Shown here: positions 3,608 through 30,600 of the stretch, in pieces | Position numbering within the stretch: position 1 is the first letter of the stretch | Layout: the number at the start of each line of letters is the position of its first letter | Source: Euprymna scolopes | Taxonomy: Eukaryota | Length of the DNA stretch: 64,000 bases | Reading direction: 5' to 3' (one strand) | Assembly: GCA_053919585.1 (NCBI GenBank) | Contig: CM132784.1 | Program-made: the position numbers and the translations under genes | Notes under the pieces: generated by a model | What the model saw: the letters and a program-made list of their open reading frames with translations, nothing else | What the model was told of the DNA's origin: nothing | The model's database searches: none

Positions 3608-6600
3608 CTGAAAGCAAATGAAAACTCAGATTTAATACAATTTGAAAATTTGATTTTCGAAAAACAATTTTGTTAAAAAATCATCGTTTGTGATCTGATA
3701 GATTTTTTTACATAACGTTTTAGTTATTGTCCAAAATTCACTTTATATTAAAAACAAAAATAATTGTTTGTTTTTTTTTTAAACTACTTGATCAATTTAT
3801 GTAATTTTTGGAATATGATTTTTTTGGTTTCAGCATAGGTCTATACACAATACATATTTATTTTTGTTTAAATTTAGGGGGAATTCTGGACAAGAACCAA
3901 TTGTTTTGTTGGTGTTCACTTAAAGTAGATCTCATAAATCTTTAAAAATGTGTTGATTTTTCGTTGGAAACTTTTTACTTAGAAGTCACCACTTATCAAG
4001 ACCCGAAGGCCACTTGAGGATAACGGTTAATGAATGTAAGGTGGTATAGTGTATATTAATGGCATAAATCGAGTAGAATTTAATTTTTCAAACTCTTGAA
4101 TTATTTGGTTGCCCATAGATTACATCCTATTTAAACATTCATAAGCAAAGAAAAATATTTGGATTTTTTTTCCTTTTTTTTTTTAAGTAAAACTTATCTT
4201 GCATAATTTTTTGTTTTAAGAAAAATTTACTCCGGTATTTGTTTTTAGAGATATTTGTTTTTGCTCTGTCGATATTGGTGTCGAGTTGGGAGTTTTTATG
4301 ACATATTTTTTTTGTTTTGTTTAGCAAGTTTTATGTTGATTTGTTTTGCTTTACAGTTAGATTTACCTCATATGGTAAGAGTAAGAAATCGATAAAAAAA
4401 AAAAGTCACGACTCTTCAGGGCAATGCCAGGTTACCCTGCTAGACTCCAATAAGTTTTTTCAAATACAATTCTGAAGTGCATAATCTATAATATTCCTTT
4501 GTATTTGTCCATTCTACTTTTCCTTGGAAACTACTGAGCCAATTTGATTGAAATTTTGTATGGACCTTTGTCATAAGATGCCACAAACTAAATATTATGC
4601 TGTTTGATGAACAGTTAAAGCTAATCGTATTTAATGCAGCCACAACGTTTATTCTAACAGCCATGAAGCACAAATTGCCCCTTTTCATAGTTTTAACATG
4701 ACAAAAAGTTTCTTAGTATAAATTGGAAAAAAATAAAAGTTTGTACCTTTATTTTGCACAATGTCAAACTTGGTCTTAAAAACTCCCAACTCGACACCAA
4801 TATTAACGGAGTATAGGGAGAATGGTCAACAAGTGATTGAAAAAAATATGTACATAGGTTTTAGAAATTCACTAACGGCATTAAACACCTTGAAAATGGA
4901 TAAGGTAAAGAAGGCCACAAAGATTTAAAAGTAACTTTAAACAAGACAGACATTGTTATAGAAATGTCCGTTTAAATGATGTCTGACCAAATTGTAAAAA
5001 GGGAAAAACGCTTGTTAAATGTTTCAGAGAGTCACTATTTTCTGAACAAAAGTGTATATGGTGACAGTGTTTTGGCAGGGACTTTCAGAAAAAGGAAAAT
5101 ATAAATTTGTTTTTACCGATCCTTGCTGTTTCCCTGGGAACTGAATTCCACCTGTGGACTTCCAGATGGACTAGTCCCACTATTTCCATTGTTGACCGAG
5201 GCACCACTGGTGGCACCACTATTGTTGCTGCTGCTGTTGCCACCCCCTCCTCCTCCTCCTCCACTCATCTTTCGTGAAGTGCTAGTTATCGCAGACACTG
5301 TGGGAGAAACTGTGGCTGTAGGCACTGGCAGGTGATCGTCGGTATCAGACTCCGCAGGAATATTGGAATTATCTTTGTTGGAAGATTTGAAAGAATTCTT
5401 CAAAAAGGAAAAACCCCAAGGAAGACCTACAAAACAAGAATAATAAAAAGAAAATGAAAACATAATTTTATAATTTTATGATTTATATATTTTTGTATTT
5501 TCTCAGTGGTAATGGAAATTTGTAGATATAAGCGCATATTACGCATCATTAGGCTCCTCTGTAATATTTAATATGGAATTAATGTTTTGGTATTTTCTTT
5601 ATCATAAGTTTTGATGGGATTATTATATTTACAATTTATTACTCTTTCAGTCTTGCAACTATGAGCTAAGCTAATGTAGTATCTTGTTTTTTCCTTAGTT
5701 TTATAATTTATTGTATTATTTTATATTAATATCAACAAACTACAACTGATTCAAACTGTTCAACAAGAACTGTAGGTATATCCTTAAGCAGGATAACTAT
5801 ATTTTACAAAATAATAAAATTATAAACATTTTTGTATTAGAGTGTATAAAAACCCCATGGGACTAACCATTTTTGGAACACCCAGGTGACTAACGCAGGG
5901 TTAAACAACTTACAGATTAAATGGTTGTGTAGAAGCAGTTCGATGCGTAATGATTAAAAATCTGTAATCGTCAAACTTTGATAAGAAACACTCGTCTAGC
6001 TGAAAACACTATCAATAATTCCCTCACACTTTATCTGTGCCTTATCTAAACGTAGATTCCATGAAAAAAGCTTCCGTTCCCCTGATTTCCAGCTGACTGC
6101 AATCTGGTTGTCTTCAAGTCCAACGTAAACAAGTTCTTGATGAGCTGTTCACCTTAGTTAACAAATTTACCTAATTTCTATTACTAACAATTACTATATT
6201 GTTCAATTAACTACTGTACACTATTAACCCTTATCCTCGAATGATCTCTGCGCCATGATAAATGGTGAAGCCTATGTAAAAAAAATCGAATCGTGTTTTT
6301 GTTTATCTCTTTATGTGTCATGTGGCAAGGGCGATAACTCTGCCTTCTTCGGTCCAAGGGAAATAATTGTTATTTATTTATTTTCTTTTTAATTGATACC
6401 TAACAATAAGTTATTAGCCACCCTCTTCACCAAACACACCTGATGGGGGAACCGCGTTAGTTGCCAATGACCGATAACGCAGCGGAGATCACGGGTTTCT
6501 AACATGAAACTAAAACTGTCCTAGGGTGTCCAGTCATCCCAGCTGTAGGTATGATTTTATGATTTATATATTTTTATATTTTTCCAGTGAGAATGAAAAT

Positions 6601-10400: not shown

Positions 10401-13400
10401 AATAATTTTTTTTATATAGTAATGAATTACCATTCATAAAGGCCTAAAGCCACTCAAGTATAAAGGTAAATGAGATTATCAACTGGATGACAAAACATGA
10501 CTACTTAAGATGACAGCTCGACAAGTATTTGTTGGCATCAAACTTGAAGAAATCAGATTGTGGTCTATAGGGAAGCAGTCCATAAATAGAAAACTGTTAG
10601 AAAGAAACTGTCCATGGTGAAATTGTAAACATAAAAATTGAGATTTTTAGACAGGAAAAAACGCTAAAAAATTTTTAATTTAATTTTATGTAAGTATAAA
10701 AAAAATGTTAATTAAATTTTATGTAAGTATAAAAAAAATGTTAATTTAATTTTATGTAAGTATAAAAAAAATGTTAATTTAATTTTATGTAAGTATAAAA
10801 AAAATGTTAATTTAATTTTATTTAAGTATAAAAAAATGTTAATTTAATTTTATTTAAGTATAAAAAAATGTTAATTTAATTTTATTTAAGTATAAAAAAA
10901 TGTTAATTTTATTTTATTTAAGTATAAAAAAATGTTAATTTAATTTTATGTAAGTATAAAAAAATTTTAATTTAATTTTATGTAAGTATAAAAAAATGTT
11001 AATTTAATTTTATTTAAGTATAAAAAATGTTAATTTAATTTTATGTAAGTATAAAAAAATGTTAATTTAATTTTATGTAAGTACAAAAAAATGTTAATTT
11101 TATGTAAGTATAAAAAAAATGTTAATTTTATTTTATGTAAGTATAAAAAAATGTTAATTTTATGTAAGTATAAAAAAATTTTAATTTAATTTTATGTAAG
11201 TATAAAAATTTTTTAATTTAATTTTATGCAAGTATAAAAAAATGTTAATTTTATGCAAGTATAAAAAAATGTTAATTTTATGCAAGTATAAAAAAATGTT
11301 AATTTTATGCAAGTATAAAAAAATGTTAATTTTATGCAAGTATAAAAAAATGTTAATTTTATGCAAGTATAAAAAAATGTTAATTTTATGCAAGTATAAA
11401 AAAATGTTAATTTTATGCAAGTATAAAAAAATGTTAATTTTATGCAAGTATAAAAAAATGTTAATTTTATGCAAGTATAAAAAAATGTTAATTTTATGCA
11501 AGTATAAAAAAATGTTAATTTTATGCAAGTATAAAAAAATGTTAATTTTATGCAAGTATAAAAAAATGTTAATTTTATGCAAGTATAAAAAAATGTTAAT
11601 TTTATGCAAGTATAAAAAAATGTTAATTTTATGCAAGTATAAAAAAATGTTAATTTTATGCAAGTATAAAAAAATGTTAATTTTATGCAAGTATAAAAAA
11701 ATGTTAATTTTATGCAAGTATAAAAAAATGTTAATTTTATGCAAGTATAAAAAAATGTTAATTTTATGCAAGTATAAAAAAATGTTAATTTTATGCAAGT
11801 ATAAAAAAATGTTAATTTTATGCAAGTATAAGAAAATGTTAATTTTATGCAAGTATAAAAAAATGTTAATTTTATGCAAGTATAAAAAAATGTTAATTTT
11901 ATGCAAGTATAAAAAAAATGTTAATTTTATGCAAGTATAAAAAAATGTTAATTTTATGCAAGTATAAAAAAATGTTAATTTAATTTTATGCAAGTATAAA
12001 AAATTTTTAATTTAATTTTATGTGAGTATAAAAAATTTTTAATTTAATTTTATGTAAGTATAAAAAATTTTTAATTTAATTTTATGTAAGTATAAAAAAT
12101 TTTTAATTTAATTTTATGTAAGTATAAAAAAATTTTTTAATTTAATTTTATGCAAGTATAAAAAAATTTTAATTTAATTTTATGTAAGTATAAAAAATTT
12201 TTAATTTAATTTTATGTAAGTATAAAAAAATTTTAATTTAATTTTATGTAAGTATAAAAAATTTTTAATTTAATTTTATGTAAGTATAAAAAATTTTTAA
12301 TTTAATTTTATGTAAGTATAAAAAGTTTTTAATTTAATTTTATGTAAGTATAAAAAAAATTTTAATTTAATTTTATGTAAGTATAAAAAAAATTTTAATT
12401 TAATTTTATGTAAGTATAAAAAATTTTATAGCACAACAGCACTAGTCGTGTTTGTATCAATGTGAATCTATATCCTTGAGTTTTTACAGACAAAACAATT
12501 CTCCAAGAATTAAGAGTACCAGGGAGATTACACTGCATATCTAATATATAAAAGGCCTTGGCAATGCTCTCAATGTTATCTGTTCCAATTCATGTTCCCT
12601 GTAAACGTTAAGATGAGAAGTTTGAAAGAAATACTTTCAGGTAATGTATCTTTGGCCATTGCTATTGGTGGTTGAGAACGTTTCTTGTAATTACTGAAGG
12701 AAACAAGCTTAATCTTGGCAGCATTGAATGTGACCATTTTTGTTTTCATTCCACTGAAGATTGGAGGTCTTCCTCCAGTGTTTCTGCCATTGCCTTAGAT
12801 ATGTGTTCATTTGTTTTCCCCTCGTTCTTGCTGTAGAGAGTGGTGTCATCAGCAAATATACCCATCTCAGAAACAATTTTATCAGAGAGGTCATTTATGA
12901 ATATCAGGAATAATAAAGGTCCAAGGATAGACCCCTGAGGTACTTCCACATTTATATCATACTGTTTAGATGTACGACCGTCGAGGACAACCTGGATTCT
13001 TCTCTTATTTAAGAAAGATTTAATTATGTTAAGTACTCGTCCAGTGTTACCATAAGATCTGATTTTAATGAGAAGACCATCATTCCATACCCTGTCAAAA
13101 GCCTTAGATATATCTAGGACTACTGCCCTACCTTCCCCTGCTTCGTCCACTGTATGGTATATACATTCAGAGATTACAGTTATGATATCTGCTGTAGAAT
13201 AGGCTTGCCTAAATCCATATTGTTGGTCGGTCAGAAGCTTAGCAGTTGTAATGTGATGGACTAGAGCTTAGTTAATTATGGACGCAAATATTTTGGCGAA
13301 AAGTAGGAGGAAGCTAATGGGGCGATAATTAACAGGTCAGTTCTTTTGCCAGAATTCTTGTAAACTGTTACCGCAGAAGCAGTTTTCCAGCAGTTAGGAA

Positions 13401-16400
13401 AGCAAGATTCGTTAAGGCATTTGTTGAAAAGTTAGGAGAGAACTAGAGCAACCTTAGTGGACAATTTTTTAATAGCACGGCCAGGATGAGATCGGGTCCA
13501 CATGTTTTTGAAGTGTCTAGGTGTCTTTTTATGATATGCACCTGAAAAAGGGTGATTTTCAGATTATCAAGTATGTCATCTGTCTGCAAAGGAAAGCCAG
13601 GGAGAAAATGATATGCTGGATCAAAAGTGGAGTTTGATGCAAACCGACTGACAGGCATGTTATTCTTCTCAGTTGCTGTGCAAACAACCTCATGATTGTT
13701 GAAGTTGGGTGAACAAGAAATAATTATGGATTGCCGATTATTACACTGTTGTAGATTTTCCAAAAATCACGGGTTCCTAATTCCTATGCCTTGATGCATT
13801 TTCTGGTGGTTTCGGTTTATTCTCTTTTAGCTGTCGTGATTTCTTTCTTACAATTATATAAAGCTAGAAACAAATGAGTTGAGCGAACAAGAAATATGGC
13901 GTTGTAAAGAGCAAAACTGAGAAGTTTTAATAGAAATAGGATACTTTCACTCCAGACAATGCCAAGTAGCCCTGCTAGTTAAAGTGTAAAAGCGGACACT
14001 CATGACAATCGTGGTTGCCTCGTGTTTTCACAAAAACAAAATAAAGACAAGAAATTTGCAGATGATTTGTCATCAAGAAAATAGAGAATCAACTCACGTG
14101 AAACAATGGAGGAGAGATTTACAGCTACAGGGTCAGGACTAGAAGAGCTGCTGTTATTGTTGGTGGTGGTGTTGGGCAGATTCGGCTGAGGACATCTGGG
14201 TGTGCCATCAGGGGTGGTTTGAGATGAGGGTGAAAGTTGTTTATCCCCACTTTTGCTGCCATTCGGAGGAGAAACAGGTGAGAGACTGGCATTCTTCTCT
14301 TGTAAAGATTTTCGTAATGGCTGAACAATCGCACTGATTGGATTTTTAGTTTTCTTTTCTGAAAAAAAAACAAACAAAAAAAAAAAACCGGATAGAATGT
14401 AGTTAAATGGGGGGGGGGCATTCTCAACAAAGTTCTGCTTTATGATTTTAATTCAATTTGCTGTTTGAATCTGGGTGAGATTTTTGCCGTTACAAACTTT
14501 TGTTTAACTTGATGCAATTTCAAGTGGATAGATAAAAACTTGGTTCCCATCTTGAATCAACAATTTCATCTTTTGTTGGACAAATTAAAAATACTAAAGG
14601 GGGTTTCACTCAACAGAGGAAGGAGATATTAAGAACTACATCTTTAAGAACCAATCCAAGTATATTTCTGATTGTATTTAAAGAGAAGGACCATGCTACA
14701 TAAAAACCTTGACACTTCAAAAGCATGTGGACCCGATCTCATCCCGGCTGTGCTATTAAAAAAGTGCTCAGCCGAAGTAGCTGCAGTTTTCTCCAAACTC
14801 TACAGCAAATGCCTTAATGAATCTTGCTTTCCAGGCTGTTGGAGGACCAGTATTCAAGAATTCTGGCGAAAGAACTGACCCATTAAATTAAATTATCGCC
14901 CCATTAGCCTCCTCCCACTTTTTGCCAAAATATTTGAGACCTTAATTAACCATGCTCTAGTCCATCACCTTACAGATGCTAAACTTCTGACTGACAAACA
15001 ATATGGATTTAGACAAGCCCGTTCCACAGCAGACATCCTAACTAATCTCTGAACGTATATACCATTCACTGGACAAAGCAGGAGAGGGCAGAGCGGTAGC
15101 TCTAGATATATCTAAGGCTTTTGACAGGGTATGGCATGAGGGTCTCCTTAGTAAAATCAGATCATACGGTATCACTGGTAGAATACTTAACATAATTAAA
15201 TCCTTCTTAGATAAGAGAAAAATCCAGGTTGTTCTCGACGGTCGTACATCTAAACTAGGCACCGCCAAAACTGTGTGTGTGGGGGGGGGGGGGGCAGGTC
15301 AGTACTTTTTGACGGACCGTCTTTTTAAAAATCTACCAAAAATCAGGTAATTATCTGATCAATACGAAATTTTCAGCGATTATTAGGAGAAGAATGAACT
15401 TTATAACAGTGTACTTATTTTTCATAAACGATATTTATATATATATATTTTTTTGCTTACAAAACCCCCCCTTGTTTTGAAGTGGGAACAAATATGCTTA
15501 AAATAATCATCTGAAACTGAACACAACATATTGTGTTGTTATAAGGGACAGAATTATAGATTAAAAAAAAAAAAATTGTTTGCATACCTTATTTTGACGT
15601 CTGAATATCAGAACTTCGATTGTGTTTAATTATCCCGCTTTTGAGTTTTGAAGTGTGAAATTCGGTGAATATGTTAAGTAAAATAATTAATTTAAGTTAA
15701 ACAAAACAAAAAAAAATTTTTTTTAATATTTATGCGAAAAAAGCCATTTTAAAATTTTTGATAAATAAATTAATTTTTTTTTAGCGAGCCGAATAATGCA
15801 TGACCATTATTAAACAGGGCATGCTTTGAATAATCGATATAAAAAAAAAATTCGATAAATATTGTGCCCTTTGTATTAAAAATAGAATCATTTTTTTCGA
15901 TCCCATTTGAAAACGTTTGCCGCCTTTCGACTACGGTGGACCAAACGCGCTGAAATAATTTTTTTTTATTCTGCTTTAAATTGCCCCCCCCCCATTTTGG
16001 GGAGCCTGGCCCCCACACGCATACACATTAAAAACCAAACTCATACAAATGGTCACCCATCTGGTACTGGCCAGCCTCAGCTTAATAATACATTGAAATT
16101 TTCGTCACTGAAAAATAAGTTTTTTTGGCCTGTTTGGTCTTCCATAGTTTTCTTCTTATCAAACGTAAACAGTGTCGCTCTAGACTCTAGATCGACGCGA
16201 AATATCTGGTTACCTATATGAATAAGTGGAATTATTTGAAATTCAGGTATTTATATTATAATATTTTTGCATATTCTCTTAGAAAATCATCCTAAATCTT
16301 AGTTAGACAATAAATGAATAAATTAATTATTTCAAAAACCTTTTTTTTTTTTTAATATTTATGTACGTTTTTTGTGCAAGACAAAAAATGTCAATTGTTA

Positions 16401-19400
16401 ACTTTTGGGGAAAATTTAACATTTAAAATTTAATTAAAAATAGTAGAAAAAGTTTTACATTATTCTGATTTCTATATGATAAAATTCAGGGTTTTATCTT
16501 TCTGGAAAAAAAAAAGTTACTCAGAAATAATGGATTTTAATAAATGTAATTTCGTTTTAAAAAACAACAACTTGATTTTGCGGCCATTTTTGGCAGTGCC
16601 TAATCTAAACAATATGATATAAATGCGGGAGTGTCCCAGGGGTCTATCCTTGGACCTCTACTGTTCCTGATATTCATAAATGACCTCCCCGACAAAATTG
16701 CCTCTTAGATGGGTATATATGCTGATGACACCACACTCTATAACAGGCACTACAGGAAACAAATGAACATATATCTAAAGAAATGGCAGAAACACTAGAG
16801 ATTGACCTCCAATTAGTAGTGGAATGGGGACAAAAATGGATAGTCACGTTCAATGCCGCCAAGACTAAACTAGTTTCATTCAATAATTACAAGAAAGCTT
16901 CTCTACCACCTATAGCAATGGCCAACGACTCTTTAGCTGAGAGTACGTCTTTCAAACTCCTTGGCCTAACGTTCACAGGAAACATGAGTCGGAACAATTA
17001 CATCGAGGACATTTCCAGGGCCGCTTCAAGGAAGGTGGGCTCTCTCTACCGTGCTAGAAAACTACTAACACCCGAAAGTATCCTGTACCTCTATAAGGCA
17101 ACCATTCGCTCATGTATGGAGTATTGCTGTCATATTTGGGCTGGTGCATTGGCTACTAGTCTCTCGCTCCTTGACAAGGTTCAAAAGAGAGTCGCAAATC
17201 TGATAGGCCCTAAACTGGCATCTAAGCTTCAGCCTCTGTCCCATCGACGAAACGTTGCATCCCTCTGCTTGTTCTACAAGTATTTTAATGGTGAATGCTC
17301 TGATGAACTGCAAGCACTTGTGCCCCCACGACGTGAACACCCTCGACAGACCCGACAAGCTGCAAAATCCCACCCCCACACTGTAGAGATCCCTAGATGT
17401 AAAAGATCTTTCTACTCCAGTAGTTTCTTCCCCAGAACCGCTAGACTTTGAAATTCCATTCCAGGTCACTGCTTCCCCAACTGTACCGACATGCAGAAGT
17501 TCAAGTGCAACGTGAACCAACATCTTGCTGCCCAAATCCCTACATAGTACCCCAGTAGTTGTTTCCCCTGATAGTAGCCCCCTACACCAAAGTGGCAATG
17601 TGCCTTGCTTGGGGTGAAAATGTAATTCAAAAAAAAAAAAAAAAAAAAAATTCTAAGATTTTTTTTTTTTTTTCAAATTTTGGTGTTTGTCCAGAATTTT
17701 CCCCTATATGAAAATATAAAAATAAGGAAAAATCTGTATGGTGTACATACCTATGATGGAAAAATATATTCCAAAAACCATTGAAATTGATTGAACAGCT
17801 ATTTTTGAAGAAAATTAAATTTTCGGGCTAAATAAAGTGATAGTATTGCAATGCCATCTTGAAAACATTCTGAAGGAACAAGGAAGATAATTCTAAATAA
17901 TTAAAACATGCAAAATTTTAAAATGCCATTCTTAACAGAGGGGGAGAGCATTGGGAAACTCAAATTTGTGCAAAAACGATTTTCTTCATAGAAGTAAAAC
18001 TACGTTACTAATTCACCTGATTTTTAGAATACAATATTATCTTTCCATCACAATTATGTACATCATATTTTTTTGTTTTGTTTTTTTTTCAAAGTTCTGG
18101 ATGTGCACCAAGTTTGTTTTTTTTATATATTAATAAGTTACCGCTTACAGAGGCCAAAATCCATTCAAGGATAAATGGGTAAACGAGAATATCAATTGGA
18201 CGACAAAACATCAGAAAGAATTGATGAAGATGGCCACAATGGACAAAATTTGACTATTTGAGGACAGCTTGATAAATATTTGTTGACCTTGAACTTGAAG
18301 ACAATCATATTGTAATCTTCAGGAAAGCAGTTCACAAATGGAAAGCCTTTGGAAAGAAACTGTCCATGGTTAAATTTGATTTATGTAAAAAGCTAAATAT
18401 AAAAGGATTAAGATTTTTATATTTAGACAAGAGAAAAAATTTTTTTAACTTTATAAAATATTTTATTTTTAAATAGTACAGCAGCACTTGCAAGGTTCTA
18501 ATCAATGTGGATCTATATTGTTGATTTATTATAGACAAACCAATAAAATCTCTAAGAATTAAGAGTACCAAGGAGATTACACAGGATATTTAAAAAAAAT
18601 ATCAAAGTGGTTTCCCTTGAGAGAAATTTCTTTTACTTACCAAAGTGTCTTTCACGTGAAGAAGGTGGAGGCGGCGGTGGTGGGGGTGGTGGTATAGGCG
18701 CCGTTTCTCGTTCAGAATGGTTAAAAGTACTGGCGGTGATCTCTGAGAAACGGGCTTGGATATGTTCCAACATTTCCTCCGTTGAAGAAACGAGCAACAG
18801 GCTTTTCTTTGAACCTTTCCGACGGTTCTTGGAGCTCGGCTCATGAGGAGGCATATGAAAGGCAGCTGGCATTCCTTCTAGCCAACTGTGATTATCAGGA
18901 GCTGCCAGGTTATCTAGTCAAATAGAGATTTCGTTTTTAATTTTTACAAGCAAATACAATATCGGATTTGGGAACGTATAATTAAACGCATATTCACATC
19001 TGTACATCTAATGCTATCGACTTTCATTTGAAAAAAAAAAAATATTGCATTTTATCTTTTGCAATTGTCACAAACAAAAACGCAAGCGAAAATTAACTCG
19101 TGTCTGTAATTATAAGACACTTCAAGATTTCCACCATACATTTCCAAAAGTAATGCCTCCTATTCTTTTATTCCACCCGAATGGATCAGTGGAGATTACA
19201 AATTGCATTGTTATGATGTCTTAGCTTATGCATTCATGACTCATTTCATCACTCTGTTGCAAATATTGACAGTGTGAAAATAAGAAAGCAATCCCTATCA
19301 TGGATGTGCATTAGAAGCAGAGATCGTTCATTAAATTCCTGGGAAAAAATTACATCGAAAATGGTGATGATTATGTACAAACAAATTCTGGAGCACAAAA

Positions 19401-24600: not shown

Positions 24601-27600
24601 CTAAAGAGATAAACAGAAGAGTTTGTATCATGACAAGGGAGATAATCATTTTCTGAAAACCGAAAATCTTAGGCCAATTTAACAAAACTCAGTTTTTGCT
24701 AATTGTCTTCGAAAACTGTTTCCATGAATGATTAATTTTCTATTTTAATTTTATTTTTGGATATGTTCATTACTGGGACATAAGTAGATACTATTAGTTT
24801 GACTTTACATTCAATGTTTTGATTTTTGCTCAAATAACTAAGAAGCACCTGGATTTTACTCAAGTTTGCTGTTGATGATGCCAATAGGAATGAAGATAGA
24901 AAAAATAGATTGCAGCAATCTGGTCAAAGACAAACATAACATTAAAACTCCGTCGAGATCATTAAAACTGCCAACCACCTTTCATTTGTCTTCTCTCACA
25001 AAAATTTAAAGTATCACTTTTTTTAGAAAGCTGTATAAAATGTGTTCTTGCTGACCATACATGTTACGGTTGCTTAGAATATTCCAAGAAGCATAAAAAC
25101 TTGAGACATTATAAATGAGCAGGTTGAACAGCAAAAAGGTGGAGGAAGGAGAATGGGAGGTTGTTGCTGACAAAAACACTTACATTGTCTCTTCATCAAT
25201 ATCATTCTCATCATTGCTGTACGTGATGTTTTCGTAAGGAATCTCATCTGTGGTGTCATCCAATTCTTCTATTTCACTTAAGACCTGAGGATAAAAAAAA
25301 AAAAAAATCAGATTTAAACGATTATTCAAAATTACTTTGTGGTTTGATTGTTCTGTTTTATGGCATATCAACCCTTTTCAGGTTATTTAACGCCAAATCC
25401 AGTAGTTCTCGTAATTTTTTTATGCTTCAAATATTTATCCATGGTGTTTGGTTTGGTTTGGTTGAAGAAAGTTGTTTTTGACTTTCCAGCTGACTACAAT
25501 ATGGTCGTCTTCAAGTCCAATGTAAACAAGTTCTTGATGAGCTGTCCCTTTAAGTAATCCAATTTACCAAATTTCCACGGCTAAAAATTGCTACACTATT
25601 GTCCCAATGACTACTGCACACTCATTAACCCTTATCCTCGAGTGGCCTATGGGCCTTGATAAAAGGCGATTCTTTTGTGAAGGAAAAAACAAAAATGGTT
25701 ACTCAATGTAAAATCCAGTAATTTTGGTAAAATGTTTTTATGCTTCAACTTTATAATATCTTCAAATATTTATCCATGGTGTTTGGTTTGGTTGTTTTAT
25801 AGAAGAAAGCTGTTGTTTTTTTTTTGACTTTGCAGAACATGATAAAGTTTTGCAAAAAGAAAAGGAAAAATTATCAATGTTTAGTGTATTTTAAGTCAGG
25901 AAGCCAATATCCTCAGACAACCTGATCTGATACCACCAGACCAGTTTGTGGATCATCACATGTGCAACAATATAGTGCGGACGAAGGAGTAACTTTATGG
26001 GTACATTAGCAGTTCAGCCAGACTTTGCTCGGGTCCTACGTACTGTTCATAACTTTCCCTACGTGTGAATACACTTTATGTAAGATTTCAAATGTTTAGA
26101 CCAAAATTTGTCTGAGTAATTTCGTAAAGACTGCAGAGGTCAATTTTTTTTTTTAATTTGGACCCATATTTTGACCCCTTAACATTTATTATTTTGATCT
26201 CACATCAAATACAAATTTTTACCTAATAATTTGGTAGAGACCACAGAGGTCAATTTTTTTAAACTTTGACCTCTATTATGACCCCTTAACATTTATTGTT
26301 TTGGGCTCAACTCAAGTTATTAAGTTAGATCCATGTCCAAGGAACCTATATCTAAAGTTTCAAGTGTTTAGACCCAAAATTGGCGGAGGAGTTTGGTAGA
26401 GTTCTCAAAGGTCAAATCGTTGAACTTTGACCCCTTAACAGCCAAATTTCTATCTGAAAACCGATTACAAAAATTTTCCCAAATCTCACTACCCTGTATA
26501 TCAAATTTCGAGTCTAGACTGAAAGTTGAAGTTATTGTGTAGGGAAATGTGCAGACTCACAGACAGACACTTTCACTTTTAGAGATATATAGATAGAGTT
26601 ATTTTTTTTCGGGGAGGGAGGGATGATTCTGTTCCTCTAAAAATGACTTATCTTTTATCGGTTCACAATTTCATAAAAATTTGTTTTTTTTGCTTTTTTT
26701 ATTACTATTGCTTCACACTTCACACTTGGAATTTTCATTTAAATAAATTTTCATTTAAATAAATTTTCATTTAAATAAATTTTAATCATTTGATAAACGT
26801 TGCCTTGCATGATTTAGATTATTCCCATCTTCACGTTTCAGCCGATGTAACCTCTGACCTTCAGGTGTATTTTGTCAAACTCTAGAATTTGTACAGAATT
26901 TCAAATGGAACCTTTTTTAATCTGGGGGGGGGGGGTTAGCATGCTCTTGTTTTATCAACCATCCATAACCAGGACAAAATTTACATAATTCACTATCCTA
27001 TTAGTATCATCCGTCGTTACTGTGTAAGGGTGGAATTTTGCTGATTGTCGGAGGTATTTACATTGAGGGGGTACAAGGGCTTGTAGTTGGATTGTTCAAT
27101 GATTTCTTCAAAACTCATGGAATCGATTGGAATAAAATTGATTCTTTCTGCGTGGATGAGGCGTCTTCGGTGTAAAGATGCGAGCCCACCTTCTTCGCAG
27201 CGGCCCTGGCAATGCTCTCAATGTATCTGTTCCAACTTATGGTCCCTGTGAACGTTAAGCTGAGGAGTTTAAAAGAAATACTTTCAGGTAATGTACCTGT
27301 AGCCATAGCTATTGGTGGCAGAGAAGGTTTCTTGTAATTATTGAAGGAAACCAGTTTAGTCTTGGCAACATTGAATGTGACCATCCATTTTTGTCCCCAT
27401 TCTACTACAGATTGGAGGTCATCCTCTAGTGTTTTTGCCATTTCTTTAGATATGTGTTCATATCCCCCCCCCTCGTGCTTGTTATACAGCGTAGTATTGT
27501 CAGCAAATATACTCATCTCGGAGACAATTTTATCAGGGAAGTCATTTATGAATATTAGGAATAATAAAGGTTCAAGGATCAACTCCTGAGGTACTCCCGC

Positions 27601-30600
27601 ATTTATATCATTATTTAGATGTATGACCATCGCGACAACCTGGATTCTTCTCTTAAGGATTTAATTACGTTATGTATTCTTCCAGTGTGTGTGTGTATGT
27701 GTACAGTCAGCACCAACCCTATTCAGGGTTTAACCGGCTTCCTCCCAAGGAGGAAGTTTCATGGGAGTATGAAATTCACAAGCAGTCTCCAGTCGCATGT
27801 ATATCCCCGTTAGGGGAGATGATGACGTTAGGTTTTTGCTACTTTTTGCAGGAAGGTGTCGACGTCCTCCTACATACAGCACCTGGACTTCCCAAATTGC
27901 TCACCCATTTTAGTAATGACCAGGCTCAACGTTGCTTAACTTCGGTGATCTGACGGGAATCAGTGTGTCAATGTGATTATGCCGTATATTCTCCCAGTGA
28001 TACCATATGATCTGATTTTCCTTAGAAGACCATCATGCCATACTCTGTCAAAAGTCTTAGATCTACCTAGGGCTACCACTATACCCTCCCCTGCTTTGTC
28101 CAGCGTATAGTATATAGGTTCAGAGATTACAGTTAGGATATCTACTGTGGAACAGGTTTGCCTAAATCCATATTGTTGGTCACTCAGAAGTTTAACAGCT
28201 GTAAGGTGATGAACTAGAGCTTGGTTAATTATGGACTCAAATATTTTGGCAAAAAGCAGGAGAAGGCTAATAGGGTGATAATTTAATGGGTCTGTTCATT
28301 TGCTAGAATTCTGGAAAACTAGTATGATAGAATCAGTTTTCCAGCAGTCAGGAAAATAAGATTCGGTAAACCATTTGTTGTAAAGTTTGGAGAGAACTGG
28401 AGCAACCTCAGTGGAGCATTTTTTTTAATAGCACAGCCAGGATGAGATCGGGTCCACATGCTTTTGAGGTGGACAGGTTTTTAGTAAAATACTCTTTCGA
28501 ATAATAAACATTATCAATAGCATTAAACTTGGTTATGTTTGCATGGATAACATGTAAACGCCTGATTAATAAATAATAATAGTAACAATAAATTAATACA
28601 TATTAAGAATACTGCTAATAATTCTAATGCTATTAGTGTTAATACCAACTTATGTAATTATAGAGAAAAAATAATCGCCCACTAATGAATAATTGTTTAG
28701 TAATTAATCTCATAAGAAGTAATAAATAACAATGAACAAAAGAAACTGCAAAAGTGTAAATATAATGATCATTACATAATGACGTCGAAATAAGAAATGA
28801 CTTCAATTAAGTTTCAAGACTTTTTTGTACAGACATTTAAAATTGTTGTAGACTCTTGAAAATTCAGTATGTTATTGTTATACATCTTATGAGATGACTA
28901 ACCAATTTTCACCCCAAACAAGGCACAGTGCCACTTTGAAGCAGCTGTACTATCAGGGACTTAATTAGTGGGGTCATTATGAAGGGAGATGAGTAGAAAG
29001 ATGTTTGACTGACAAATTTTTATGAATTCAGATTCAAATGAATAGCTACAGCAGGAATTGGAATACACCCTACTAAAGCCTGATTATTATAGCTGGTGAA
29101 TTTCAAAAATACAATCTGGACGTGAGGACACTTTAGAAGAATGATATGCAATAAAATTCTGTTTTAAACTTGAAAAAATGCGATAGAAACATATGGAATG
29201 CTTCAGACTGATTTGGGACCATCTTGCGTGAATTGAGCGTCAGTTTTTGAGTGGCATAAGAGATTAAAGAAAGACAGGAAGTCTGTGAGATGAAAAGTGT
29301 GGGAGGAGTAAGGAAGTCAGAACACCAAATTTGATTGGCCAAATAAAGAATTTCATGGATAAGGGCGGTTGTGTGTCGAGAGAAACAATAAGTGAACAGT
29401 TTGATGCCATATGGGAACTGTTTACAATTATTTGCAGAAAACTGAAGATACGGAAGATTTGTGCGAATGCACCAGTCCACAACTCCATCCTTGTCACAAA
29501 CTATTTGACGAAGATGGGCATCAAGACAGGTCCTCATCCTCCCTATGGCCCAGACCTTGCTCCCAATGACTGCGATGAGAGTTTCATGTATGTACTAATA
29601 AAAGTGCCCATATGAAAAAAGTCTGGAAACTTATTGAAGGCACCTCATAGTACTACACTGTTAAAATATACATGCAAATAAAACCGCATAAATATTAACT
29701 TTAATATCAATTTTGTTTTGGGTAACTAAGATTTTAAAAAATGTATGGCTAAATGTAGCCATGCAAACAAATATTTGTGTTGTGTAAATTGAGCAATATA
29801 ACAAGAAAAATATTTTGTTTTAAAAAATATTTTGTCTTAAAAAATATTTTGTTTTAAAAAGTATTTTGTTTTAAAAAGTATTTTGTTTTAAAAAGTATTT
29901 TGTTTTAAAAAATATTTTGTTTTAAAAAGTATTTTGTCTTAAAAAATATTTTGTTTTAAAAAATATTTTGTCTTAAAAAATATTTTGTCTTAAAAAATAT
30001 TTTGTCTTAAAAAATATTTTGTCTTAAAAAATATTTTGTTTTAAAAAATATTTTGTTTTAAAAAATATTTTGTTTTAAAAAATATTTTGTCTTAAAAAAT
30101 ATTTTGTTTTAAAAAGTATTTTGTTTTAAAAAGTATTTTGTTTTAAAAAATATTTTGTTTTAAAAAATATTTTGTTTTAAAAAATATTTTGTTTTAAAAA
30201 GTATTTTGTCTTAAAAAATATTTTGTTTTAAAAAATATTTTGTCTTAAAAAATATTTTGTTTTAAAAAATATTTTGTTTTAAAAAGTATTTTGTTTTAAA
30301 AAGTATTTTGTTTTAAAAAGTATTTTGTTTTAAAAAATATTTTGTTTTAAAAAATATTTTGTTTTAAAAAATATTTTGTTTTAAAAAGTATAGAAAAAAC
30401 AAAACATAAAAAAATTGTTCAAATAATTAACAATGCTAATATTAATATTTTTCAATTCATTTAACAATGTAATATGAGCAGTAAATAGGATTTTGCTACA
30501 GTCACGATTTAGGTCAATTATTGATGCAGGGTTTTTCAAAATACGTCCATTTTGTTAATTTTATGATTGATTCATTTTATGGCATATCAACCTTAGTAGT

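What the first reader, a model, noticed from the sequence alone, without database searches (positions are those of the whole stretch)
27675..27999. 5S rRNA-derived SINE (SINE3-type) with TSD, twin 3' hairpins and (AC)n tail
Seen: a ~115-nt near full-length 5S rRNA head on the minus strand (27872-27986), with box-A-like AAGTTAAGCAACG and box-C-like ATGGGTGA. A ~180-nt unrelated body follows, ending in two perfect hairpins (CTTCCTCC-3nt-GGAGGAAG at 27738-27756; AACCCT-4nt-AGGGTT at 27715-27730) and an ACAT/AC tail. A 13-bp TSD (one mismatch) flanks it, and the single pre-insertion site can be read in sister CR1 copies near 13035 and 15175. Known: 5S-derived SINEs are much rarer than tRNA-derived ones, and the cephalopod SINEs I know of are tRNA-derived. 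Inference: this may be an undescribed SINE3 family whose 3' hairpins are the LINE RT recognition signal.
Basis: partly seen in the sequence, partly recalled or inferred. Interest (0 to 1): 0.7.

Follow-up and report, generated by a model that had tools for sequence, protein, structure and literature searches.

The report
Cephalopod-type 5S-headed SINE family copy
This is one fairly young copy of a real short retrotransposon family of a few thousand copies whose front end is a modified 5S ribosomal RNA gene; it is a new family of a known kind, in an animal group whose genomes are published as almost SINE-free.

Summary
Window 27685-27989 (minus strand) is a ~305-bp element. It has a full-length 5S head (Rfam RF00001, 64.8 bits, E 2.4e-11), a ~170-nt unrelated body ending in three hairpins, and an (AC)n tail. 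A 13-bp target-site duplication with one mismatch flanks it, and the empty site is readable in two sister LINE copies in the window.

Head and body are fused in every copy examined. The genome gives 4,519-6,535 first-look candidates and 478 exact matches to a 28-mer of the tail. Copies lie on many contigs, show 8-20-bp duplications and 5' truncations, and differ from their consensus by about 4% (K2P). The body start was never found without the 5S end.

It is therefore a SINE3-type family copied by a LINE enzyme, not a one-off chimera.

Three things remain unproven:
- No partner LINE was found.
- The claim that the hairpins are the recognition signal rests on circumstantial evidence only.
- Pol III transcription was not shown.

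I found no paper describing cephalopod 5S SINEs. Repbase, Dfam and SINEBase could not be searched. This scan has already reported 5S-headed SINE families on other pieces of this same genome, so within the scan the kind is not new. This (AC)n-tailed family looks like one of its younger members.

The parts
27987..27999 (-). Upstream target-site duplication, CACTGGGAGAATA. Its last bases overlap the ambiguous first bases of the element.
27871..27989 (-). 5S rRNA-derived head, full length. The family consensus starts (AT)ATACGGC.
   Evidence: RF00001, 64.8 bits. It is 79-81% identical to the genome's own 5S genes. The near-consensus copy L002 keeps 33 of 34 model base pairs (its one break is copy-specific), and helix I carries two compensatory double changes.
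27927..27942 (-). Box-A-like part of the internal Pol III promoter (AAGTTAAGCAACGTTG).
   Evidence: Differs at one base from the genuine 5S gene of this genome.
27920..27925 (-). Intermediate-element-like GCCTGG.
   Evidence: Identical to the genuine 5S gene.
27899..27916 (-). Box-C-like stretch. The ATGGGTGACC core is intact in the family; this copy has GAGC in place of GACC.
27701..27870 (-). Family-specific body with no Rfam match. No T4 run on the sense strand of the consensus.
   Evidence: The body start was never found without the 5S end.
27757..27774 (-). Hairpin 0 (TTTCAT-ACTCCC-ATGAAA). Its 3' arm is not kept in the old subfamily.
27738..27756 (-). Hairpin 1, an 8-bp perfect stem. The loop is TTG here and TTC in the consensus.
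27715..27730 (-). Hairpin 2, a 6-bp perfect stem with a GAAT loop.
27685..27700 (-). ACAT(AC)n tail. Across copies the tail runs from 0 to more than 58 nt.
27676..27688 (-). Downstream target-site duplication, CACTGGAAGAATA. Its first CAC overlaps the tail.
27182..28486 (-). Host: a fragment of a reverse-transcriptase-coding LINE, split by the SINE.
   Evidence: Sister copies at 12554-13515 (-) and 14697-17042 (+), 81-85% identical. Pfam RVT_1 on 27115-27630.

Best explanation
A non-autonomous retrotransposon of the SINE3 class, meaning a SINE with a 5S rRNA-derived head. A master copy is presumably transcribed by RNA polymerase III from the internal 5S-type promoter (box A, IE, box C), starting at the 5S +1 position. 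This step is inferred from sequence. The RNA keeps a 5S-like fold and carries a hairpin-rich body. A LINE-encoded endonuclease and reverse transcriptase then nicks a target and primes on the (AC)n 3' repeats, probably guided by the last ~63 nt (hairpins 1 and 2). It copies the RNA into the genome by target-primed reverse transcription. This produces the features that are shown here: 8-20-bp target-site duplications, variable (AC)n length, frequent 5' truncation and dispersed copies. The window copy landed inside an older LINE fragment and has since picked up 11 substitutions. The partner LINE is unknown.
For: - Head: RF00001 over the whole model. The near-consensus copy L002 keeps 33 of 34 model base pairs, its one break being copy-specific. 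G1-C118 and U3-A116 of the genuine 5S are both replaced by A-U.
- Family: 6,535 first-look candidates for the whole element, 4,519 for the body and 2,308 for the head. All 40 scored hits cover head plus body at 93-96% identity. There are 478 exact copies of a 28-mer of the tail.
- Head-body link: the body start never follows anything but the 5S end. The head's 3' 23-mer precedes another body in only 2 places.
- Sample: in 26 copies picked only for an intact tail 28-mer, 17 are full length and 9 are 5'-truncated or internally deleted. Mean K2P is 0.040.
- Target sites: duplications were found in 28 of the full-length copies examined, most often 13 bp. The base before the duplication is C in 16 of 28, and its first base is A in 18 of 28, in phase with the (AC)n tail.
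- Insertion: the empty site is present in two sister LINE copies.
- Transcribability: no TTTT on the sense strand of the consensus.
- Tail module: a chimera in L077 (a 265-nt piece of another LINE plus the last 63 nt of the SINE) has its own 28-bp duplication.
- Hairpin conservation: the stems of hairpins 1 and 2 are kept between a subfamily 83-87% identical to the consensus and the young one, while the loop of hairpin 2 and the terminal 12-mer changed.
Against: - No LINE sharing the tail was found. LINE dependence therefore rests only on the insertion hallmarks.
- Pol III transcription is not shown. Poly(A) RNA-seq reads cover both strands about equally, with no defined starts or ends, as expected for copies embedded in longer transcripts.
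- The predicted fold of the body is only modestly better than shuffles (z -1.8; whole element z -2.6).
- The chimera is a single locus.
Confidence: 0.88

Rival explanations
1. It is a real SINE, but the hairpins are not the recognition signal. The partner enzyme needs only the (AC)n repeats ('relaxed' recognition), and the hairpins serve RNA stability or are leftovers of the body's unknown source.
For: No LINE with a homologous tail was found, even allowing 3 mismatches. The terminal 12-mer and the loop of hairpin 2 differ between subfamilies. Microhomology between target and (AC)n is frequent.
Against: The stems of hairpins 1 and 2 are unchanged between subfamilies that differ by more than 13% elsewhere. 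The one chimeric insertion keeps exactly the part from hairpin 1 onward. (AC)n microsatellites are common in the genome, so a repeat-only signal would be unspecific (inference).
Confidence: 0.3
2. It is a one-off chimera or 5S retropseudogene joined to unrelated sequence.
For: None after testing.
Against: Thousands of copies carry the same head-body junction. The head has diagnostic substitutions shared by all copies and absent from the 5S genes.
Confidence: 0.01
3. It is a solo LTR of a 5S-bearing miniature LTR retrotransposon of the Cassandra or Ajax kind.
For: Such elements also carry a 5S promoter (PMC10886601).
Against: Duplication length is variable (8-20 bp) rather than fixed at 5 bp. 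The element has an (AC)n tail of variable length and graded 5' truncations. No paired copies flank an internal region in any of about 70 loci.
Confidence: 0.02

Closest known systems
SINE3 of zebrafish and other 5S-derived SINEs (Kapitonov and Jurka 2003, as cited in PMC5786205 and PMC3272025)
   Same: A 5S rRNA-derived head with box A, IE and box C at the 5' end. An unrelated body. A non-poly(A) 3' end. Target-site duplications. Thousands of dispersed copies.
   Different: The body and tail sequences are unrelated as far as can be judged, and no Rfam or other match was found. The host is a mollusc of cephalopod type. For known families the tail is traced to a named LINE. Here no partner is known.
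HaSE3 and other lepidopteran SINE3 families (PMC3272025, PMC10886601)
   Same: An invertebrate 5S-headed SINE. Conservation is highest in the promoter boxes and lower in the 5' part of the head.
   Different: HaSE3 shares its body and tail with a tRNA SINE and ends in an RTE-derived tail. Here the body was found only behind this 5S head and the tail is (AC)n.
UnaSINE1/UnaL2-type 'stringent' LINE-SINE pairs (Kajikawa and Okada 2002; from my own knowledge, not read here)
   Same: A 3' stem-loop followed by short tandem repeats whose number varies between copies, as expected if the reverse transcriptase binds the stem-loop and slips on the repeats.
   Different: That system has a tRNA head, a known partner and experimental proof. 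None of these applies here.
Ceph-SINEs of squid and cuttlefish (Akasaki et al. 2010, cited in PMC4824008 and PMC5786205)
   Same: The same host group. Short elements mobilised by LINEs.
   Different: Ceph-SINEs have tRNA heads and a Ceph domain. This element has a 5S head, and no tRNA was detected in the window. The one Ceph-domain 11-mer quoted in PMC5786205 is not in the family consensus.
Other 5S-headed SINE families of this same genome
   Same: A near-identical 5S head variant. Target-site duplications. Some copies lie in (TA)n microsatellites.
   Different: Different bodies and tails. L093 has no (AC)n tail. Earlier notes call those families old and probably extinct. This family averages 4% divergence, and its best copy is 99% identical to the consensus.

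Membership tests
SINE (formal SINEBase definition, PMC3531059) | Short (<1 kb) interspersed, non-tandem repeat | tested here: met
   About 290 bp plus tail. Copies lie on contigs C1-C46 and on unplaced contigs, with unrelated flanks.
SINE (formal SINEBase definition, PMC3531059) | [quoted passage not shown] | tested here: met
   478 exact matches to a 28-mer of the tail. 4,519 first-look candidates for the body.
SINE (formal SINEBase definition, PMC3531059) | At least 60% identity to tRNA, 5S rRNA or 7SL RNA over at least 60 nt | tested here: met
   79-81% identity to the genome's own 5S genes over about 120 nt. RF00001 at 64.8 bits.
SINE3 (5S-derived SINE) | 5S-derived head at the 5' end with the internal promoter (box A, IE, box C) | tested here: met
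   By sequence only. Box A plus IE agree at 22 of 23 positions, and the box C core is intact.
SINE3 (5S-derived SINE) | Transcribed by RNA polymerase III from its own promoter | tested here: inconclusive
   Poly(A) RNA-seq shows both strands equally and no defined ends. No small-RNA or total-RNA data were laid. No T4 run inside the consensus.
SINE3 (5S-derived SINE) | Distinct from 5S retropseudogenes: an extra body and diagnostic substitutions shared by copies | tested here: met
LINE-mobilised retroposon (target-primed reverse transcription) | Target-site duplications of variable length, 5' truncation, a variable 3' repeat and an empty site | tested here: met
LINE-mobilised retroposon (target-primed reverse transcription) | 3' tail shared with a partner LINE | tested here: inconclusive
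   None was found by context-restricted patterns or in about 330 kb of held sequence. One candidate LINE ends in poly(A). The search was not exhaustive.
Ceph-SINE superfamily | tRNA-derived head | tested here: not met
   The head is 5S. ARAGORN finds no tRNA in the window.
Ceph-SINE superfamily | Ceph central domain | not testable with these tools
   No reference sequence was available. Only an 11-mer is quoted in PMC5786205, and it is absent from the consensus.
Cassandra/Ajax (TRIM with 5S in the LTRs) | Paired LTRs with a primer-binding site and a fixed short duplication | tested here: not met
   Single units, 8-20-bp duplications and an (AC)n tail.

The most novel reading that the evidence does not exclude
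Squid and cuttlefish genomes, published as almost SINE-free, in fact hold several 5S-headed SINE families. This (AC)n-tailed one has been active recently, or still is. It is mobilised through a ~63-nt two-hairpin module by a LINE that shares no recognisable tail sequence with it. That would mean recognition by structure or by the repeat alone.
Probability: 0.25. Interest if true: 0.5.

Novelty: new member of a known kind. Interest (0 to 1): 0.3.

Why it matters
SINEs with a 5S head are much rarer than tRNA-derived ones. None is described for cephalopods in the literature I could search, and a recent cuttlefish genome paper states that Decapodiformes have almost no SINEs (PMC13218726). Families like this one are probably sitting among the 'unclassified' repeats of such annotations. 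Naming them would correct the repeat landscape. It would also give insertion markers for squid and cuttlefish phylogeny, and a natural system for asking how a LINE enzyme picks an RNA that ends in hairpins plus (AC)n. The gain is in annotation and comparative genomics, not a new principle.

Tried and rejected
**Partner LINE by context-restricted exact patterns**
- Body start not preceded by the 5S end: 0 hits.
- Hairpin 2 onward not preceded by the SINE context: 0 hits.
- Terminal 20-mer with another context: 6 hits, all SINE copies with a 1-nt deletion.
- Hairpin 1 onward with another context: 0 exact hits. Allowing 3 mismatches gave 31 hits. The 15 fetched were all SINE variants, including old-subfamily copies.

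**Partner LINE among held sequence**
- No recurrent (AC)n-tailed family other than the SINE in about 270 kb.
- No tail-only match other than truncated SINEs in about 330 kb.

**LINE 'X' from the chimera as partner**
- It is an APE-endonuclease LINE.
- It ends in poly(A), so it was rejected.

**Host LINE of the window as partner**
- Only a 1.3-kb internal fragment is present, with no 3' end.

**Other attempts**
- Rfam at a permissive threshold on the body: nothing.
Smaller ones were served.
- SINEBase supplementary consensus sequences are not held.
- The organism's name is coded in the run table. I did not verify 'cephalopod' myself beyond the 5.9-Gb genome, contig numbers running up to C46 among the hits, and two runs labelled 'mollusc metagenome'.

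Full report
**Observation**

The minus strand of window 27685-27989 reads as a 5S head, then a body, then an (AC)n tail. Rfam's 5S model matches 27871-27989 over all 120 model positions, at 64.8 bits against a gathering score of 38 and E 2.4e-11. It is the only Rfam family in the 64-kb window.

The hairpin-1 pattern occurs once in the window, against none in 100 shuffles. RNA folding adds a third hairpin just upstream. All three appear in both the minimum-energy and the centroid structures.

The 13-bp duplication with one mismatch is present. The two flanks are contiguous in two sister copies of the host LINE, near 13046/13048 and 15172/15173, each with one copy of the target. So an insertion into a pre-existing LINE fragment is shown directly.

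**Is it a family?**

A DNA search of the window's own 5.9-Gb assembly with the whole element gave 6,535 first-look candidates. All 40 scored hits span head and body at 93-96% identity and lie on many contigs. The body alone gave 4,519 candidates and the head alone 2,308. A 28-mer of the tail occurs exactly 478 times. At about 4-5% divergence per site, that points to a few thousand copies; this step is inference.

An alignment of 30 loci fixes the limits. The element starts at (AT)ATACGGCATAATC and ends at ...GCTGACTGCAC followed by (AC)n of very variable length. Flanks are unrelated between loci.

The start of the body was never found behind anything other than the 5S end.

**Unbiased sample and age**

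I took 26 copies chosen only for an intact tail 28-mer.
- 17 are full length and 9 are 5'-truncated or internally deleted.
- Identity to the consensus is 91-97%, with a mean K2P of 0.040.
- The window copy has 11 substitutions (K2P 0.040), five of them at CpG sites.
- CpG sites change about 3.5 times faster than other sites.
- The best copy seen is 99% identical to the consensus.

An older subfamily also exists. It is 83-87% identical to the consensus and has a different hairpin-2 loop and terminal 12-mer.

**Insertion signature**

Duplications were recognisable in 28 of the full-length copies examined. They are 8-20 bp long, most often 13 bp. The base before the duplication is C in 16 of 28, and the first duplicated base is A in 18 of 28. 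The target therefore tends to continue the AC phase of the tail, as expected if the nicked DNA end anneals to the (AC)n of the RNA.

Several copies lie in (TA)n microsatellites: L018, L063 and L074. Variable duplications, graded 5' truncation and a variable 3' repeat are the hallmarks of LINE-type target-primed reverse transcription. They exclude a DNA transposon or a solo LTR.

**The head**

The genome's genuine 5S genes form a tandem array on contig C18 and score about 115 bits. The SINE head is 79-81% identical to them. Differences cluster outside the promoter: box A plus IE agree at 22 of 23 positions, and the ATGGGTGACC core of box C is intact.

Of the 34 base pairs of the Rfam model, the near-consensus copy L002 keeps 33, and its one break is copy-specific. 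In helix I, two pairs of the genuine gene (G-C and U-A) are both replaced by A-U through changes on both sides. The master copies have therefore been kept foldable as a 5S-like RNA. This fits dependence on 5S-type transcription or RNA-binding factors; that reading is inference.

The consensus has no T4 run on the sense strand, so Pol III could read through the whole element.

**Expression**

Poly(A) RNA-seq reads of a same-species run cover the element on both strands about equally. No positions stand out where many molecules begin or end. This is what copies embedded in longer transcripts give. It neither shows nor excludes a Pol III transcript.

DNA contigs from three other coded organisms also cover the body at 90% identity or more. 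The family, or close relatives of it, is therefore not confined to one sample. The names are coded, so I cannot say how far apart these organisms are.

**Partner LINE and the hairpin hypothesis**

I could not find a LINE with this tail.
- Exact-pattern searches required a non-SINE context in front of the body, of hairpin 1, of hairpin 2 or of the terminal 20-mer. They gave nothing, or only SINE variants.
- Allowing three mismatches gave 31 hits. The 15 fetched were all SINE copies.
- No other (AC)n-tailed repeat recurs in the sequence I held.

One locus is informative. In L077 a 5'-truncated SINE copy is followed by a second insertion. That insertion consists of a 265-nt antisense piece of another LINE ('X') joined to exactly the last 63 nt of the SINE, from hairpin 1 to the tail. 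The whole is flanked by its own 28-bp duplication, and it uses the same nick site as the first copy.

Whether this arose by template switching or from a read-through transcript, an RNA ending in those 63 nt was evidently copied and integrated.

LINE X has an APE-type endonuclease but ends in poly(A), so it is not the partner by tail homology.

The stems of hairpins 1 and 2 are conserved between the old and young subfamilies.

**Comparison with what is known**

By the formal SINEBase criteria (PMC3531059) the element is a SINE. By its head it is SINE3.
- It is not a Ceph-SINE, because it has no tRNA head.
- It is not a Cassandra or Ajax element.
- A near-identical head 3' end joined to a different body occurs at two loci. 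This agrees with earlier notes of this scan that the genome has several 5S-headed families.
- Full-text searches found no paper on cephalopod 5S SINEs.
- The Sepia officinalis genome paper says Decapodiformes contain almost no SINEs.
- Repbase, Dfam and SINEBase could not be queried, so 'undescribed' stays probable rather than shown.

**Verdict**

This is a new member of a known kind. Interest is modest, because the kind is well known and the scan has already reported sister families on other DNA of this genome. A family consensus was computed only inside scripts for measuring divergence and is not reproduced here.

Noticed in passing
L077:1425-2061 (G000 C3, about 19.93 Mb), minus strand: Two insertions share one nick site. 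The first is a 5'-truncated SINE (2049-1812) with a 12-bp duplication. The second is a chimera of a 265-nt antisense piece of LINE X (1781-1517) plus the last 63 nt of the SINE (1519-1453). The chimera is flanked by a 28-bp duplication (1809-1782 and 1452-1425).
   Followed up: partly
G000 C18, about 127.42-128.24 Mb (L032-L040); G000 C5:158595083-158595201 (L031): The genuine 5S rRNA genes sit in a tandem array with a period of about 270 bp, spanning roughly 0.8 Mb. A lone 5S copy on C5 scores slightly higher (119 bits) and is marginally closer to the SINE head.
   Followed up: no
L093:1411-1760 and L094 (minus strand), around 1500: A second 5S-headed SINE family. Its head has an identical 3' 23-mer, but the body is different and there is no (AC)n tail. 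L093 is flanked by the duplication ACCTATAGTTTTA.
   Followed up: partly
L078-L092 (LINE X), e.g. L084:1085-3269 with L090:1-640: A young LINE family with an APE endonuclease and a poly(A) tail (copies 90-97% identical, 1,637 first-look candidates). Six copies on C46 (6.2-9.0 Mb) sit in a block that is 98-99% identical over 3.3 kb, which suggests segmental duplication.
   Followed up: partly
L090:~615-700: This LINE X copy is inserted into another copy of the same host-LINE family that the window SINE hit. Its 3' junction lies only about 15 bp from the equivalent of the SINE's target site. This may be a local hot spot for nicking, or chance.
   Followed up: no
L011 (C19:22.77 Mb) and L023 (C79): The same insertion with identical flanks sits on a chromosome-scale contig and on a small unplaced contig. 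The (AC)n tails differ in length (28 against 16 nt). Probably a haplotig showing length polymorphism in the tail.
   Followed up: no
L018, L063, L074 (also L029, L053): SINE copies inserted in (TA)n microsatellites, 3-5 of about 56 copies.
   Followed up: partly
window 15255-16602: The second sister copy of the host LINE carries its own A/T-rich insertion of about 1.35 kb, some 80 bp from the site equivalent to the SINE target. It has no tRNA or 5S match.
   Followed up: no
L099, L101, L103, L104, L107: An older subfamily of the same SINE, 83-87% identical to the consensus. Hairpin 1 is unchanged, the hairpin-2 loop is AAAT in place of (T)GAAT, and the terminal sequence before (AC)n is ...GTGCYGTTTCAC.
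   Followed up: partly
L089 (minus strand), 4281-4567: Another full-length copy of the SINE turned up by chance in a 6-kb stretch fetched for a different reason. That is unexpected at about one copy per megabase and hints that copy number or local clustering is higher than my estimate.
   Followed up: no
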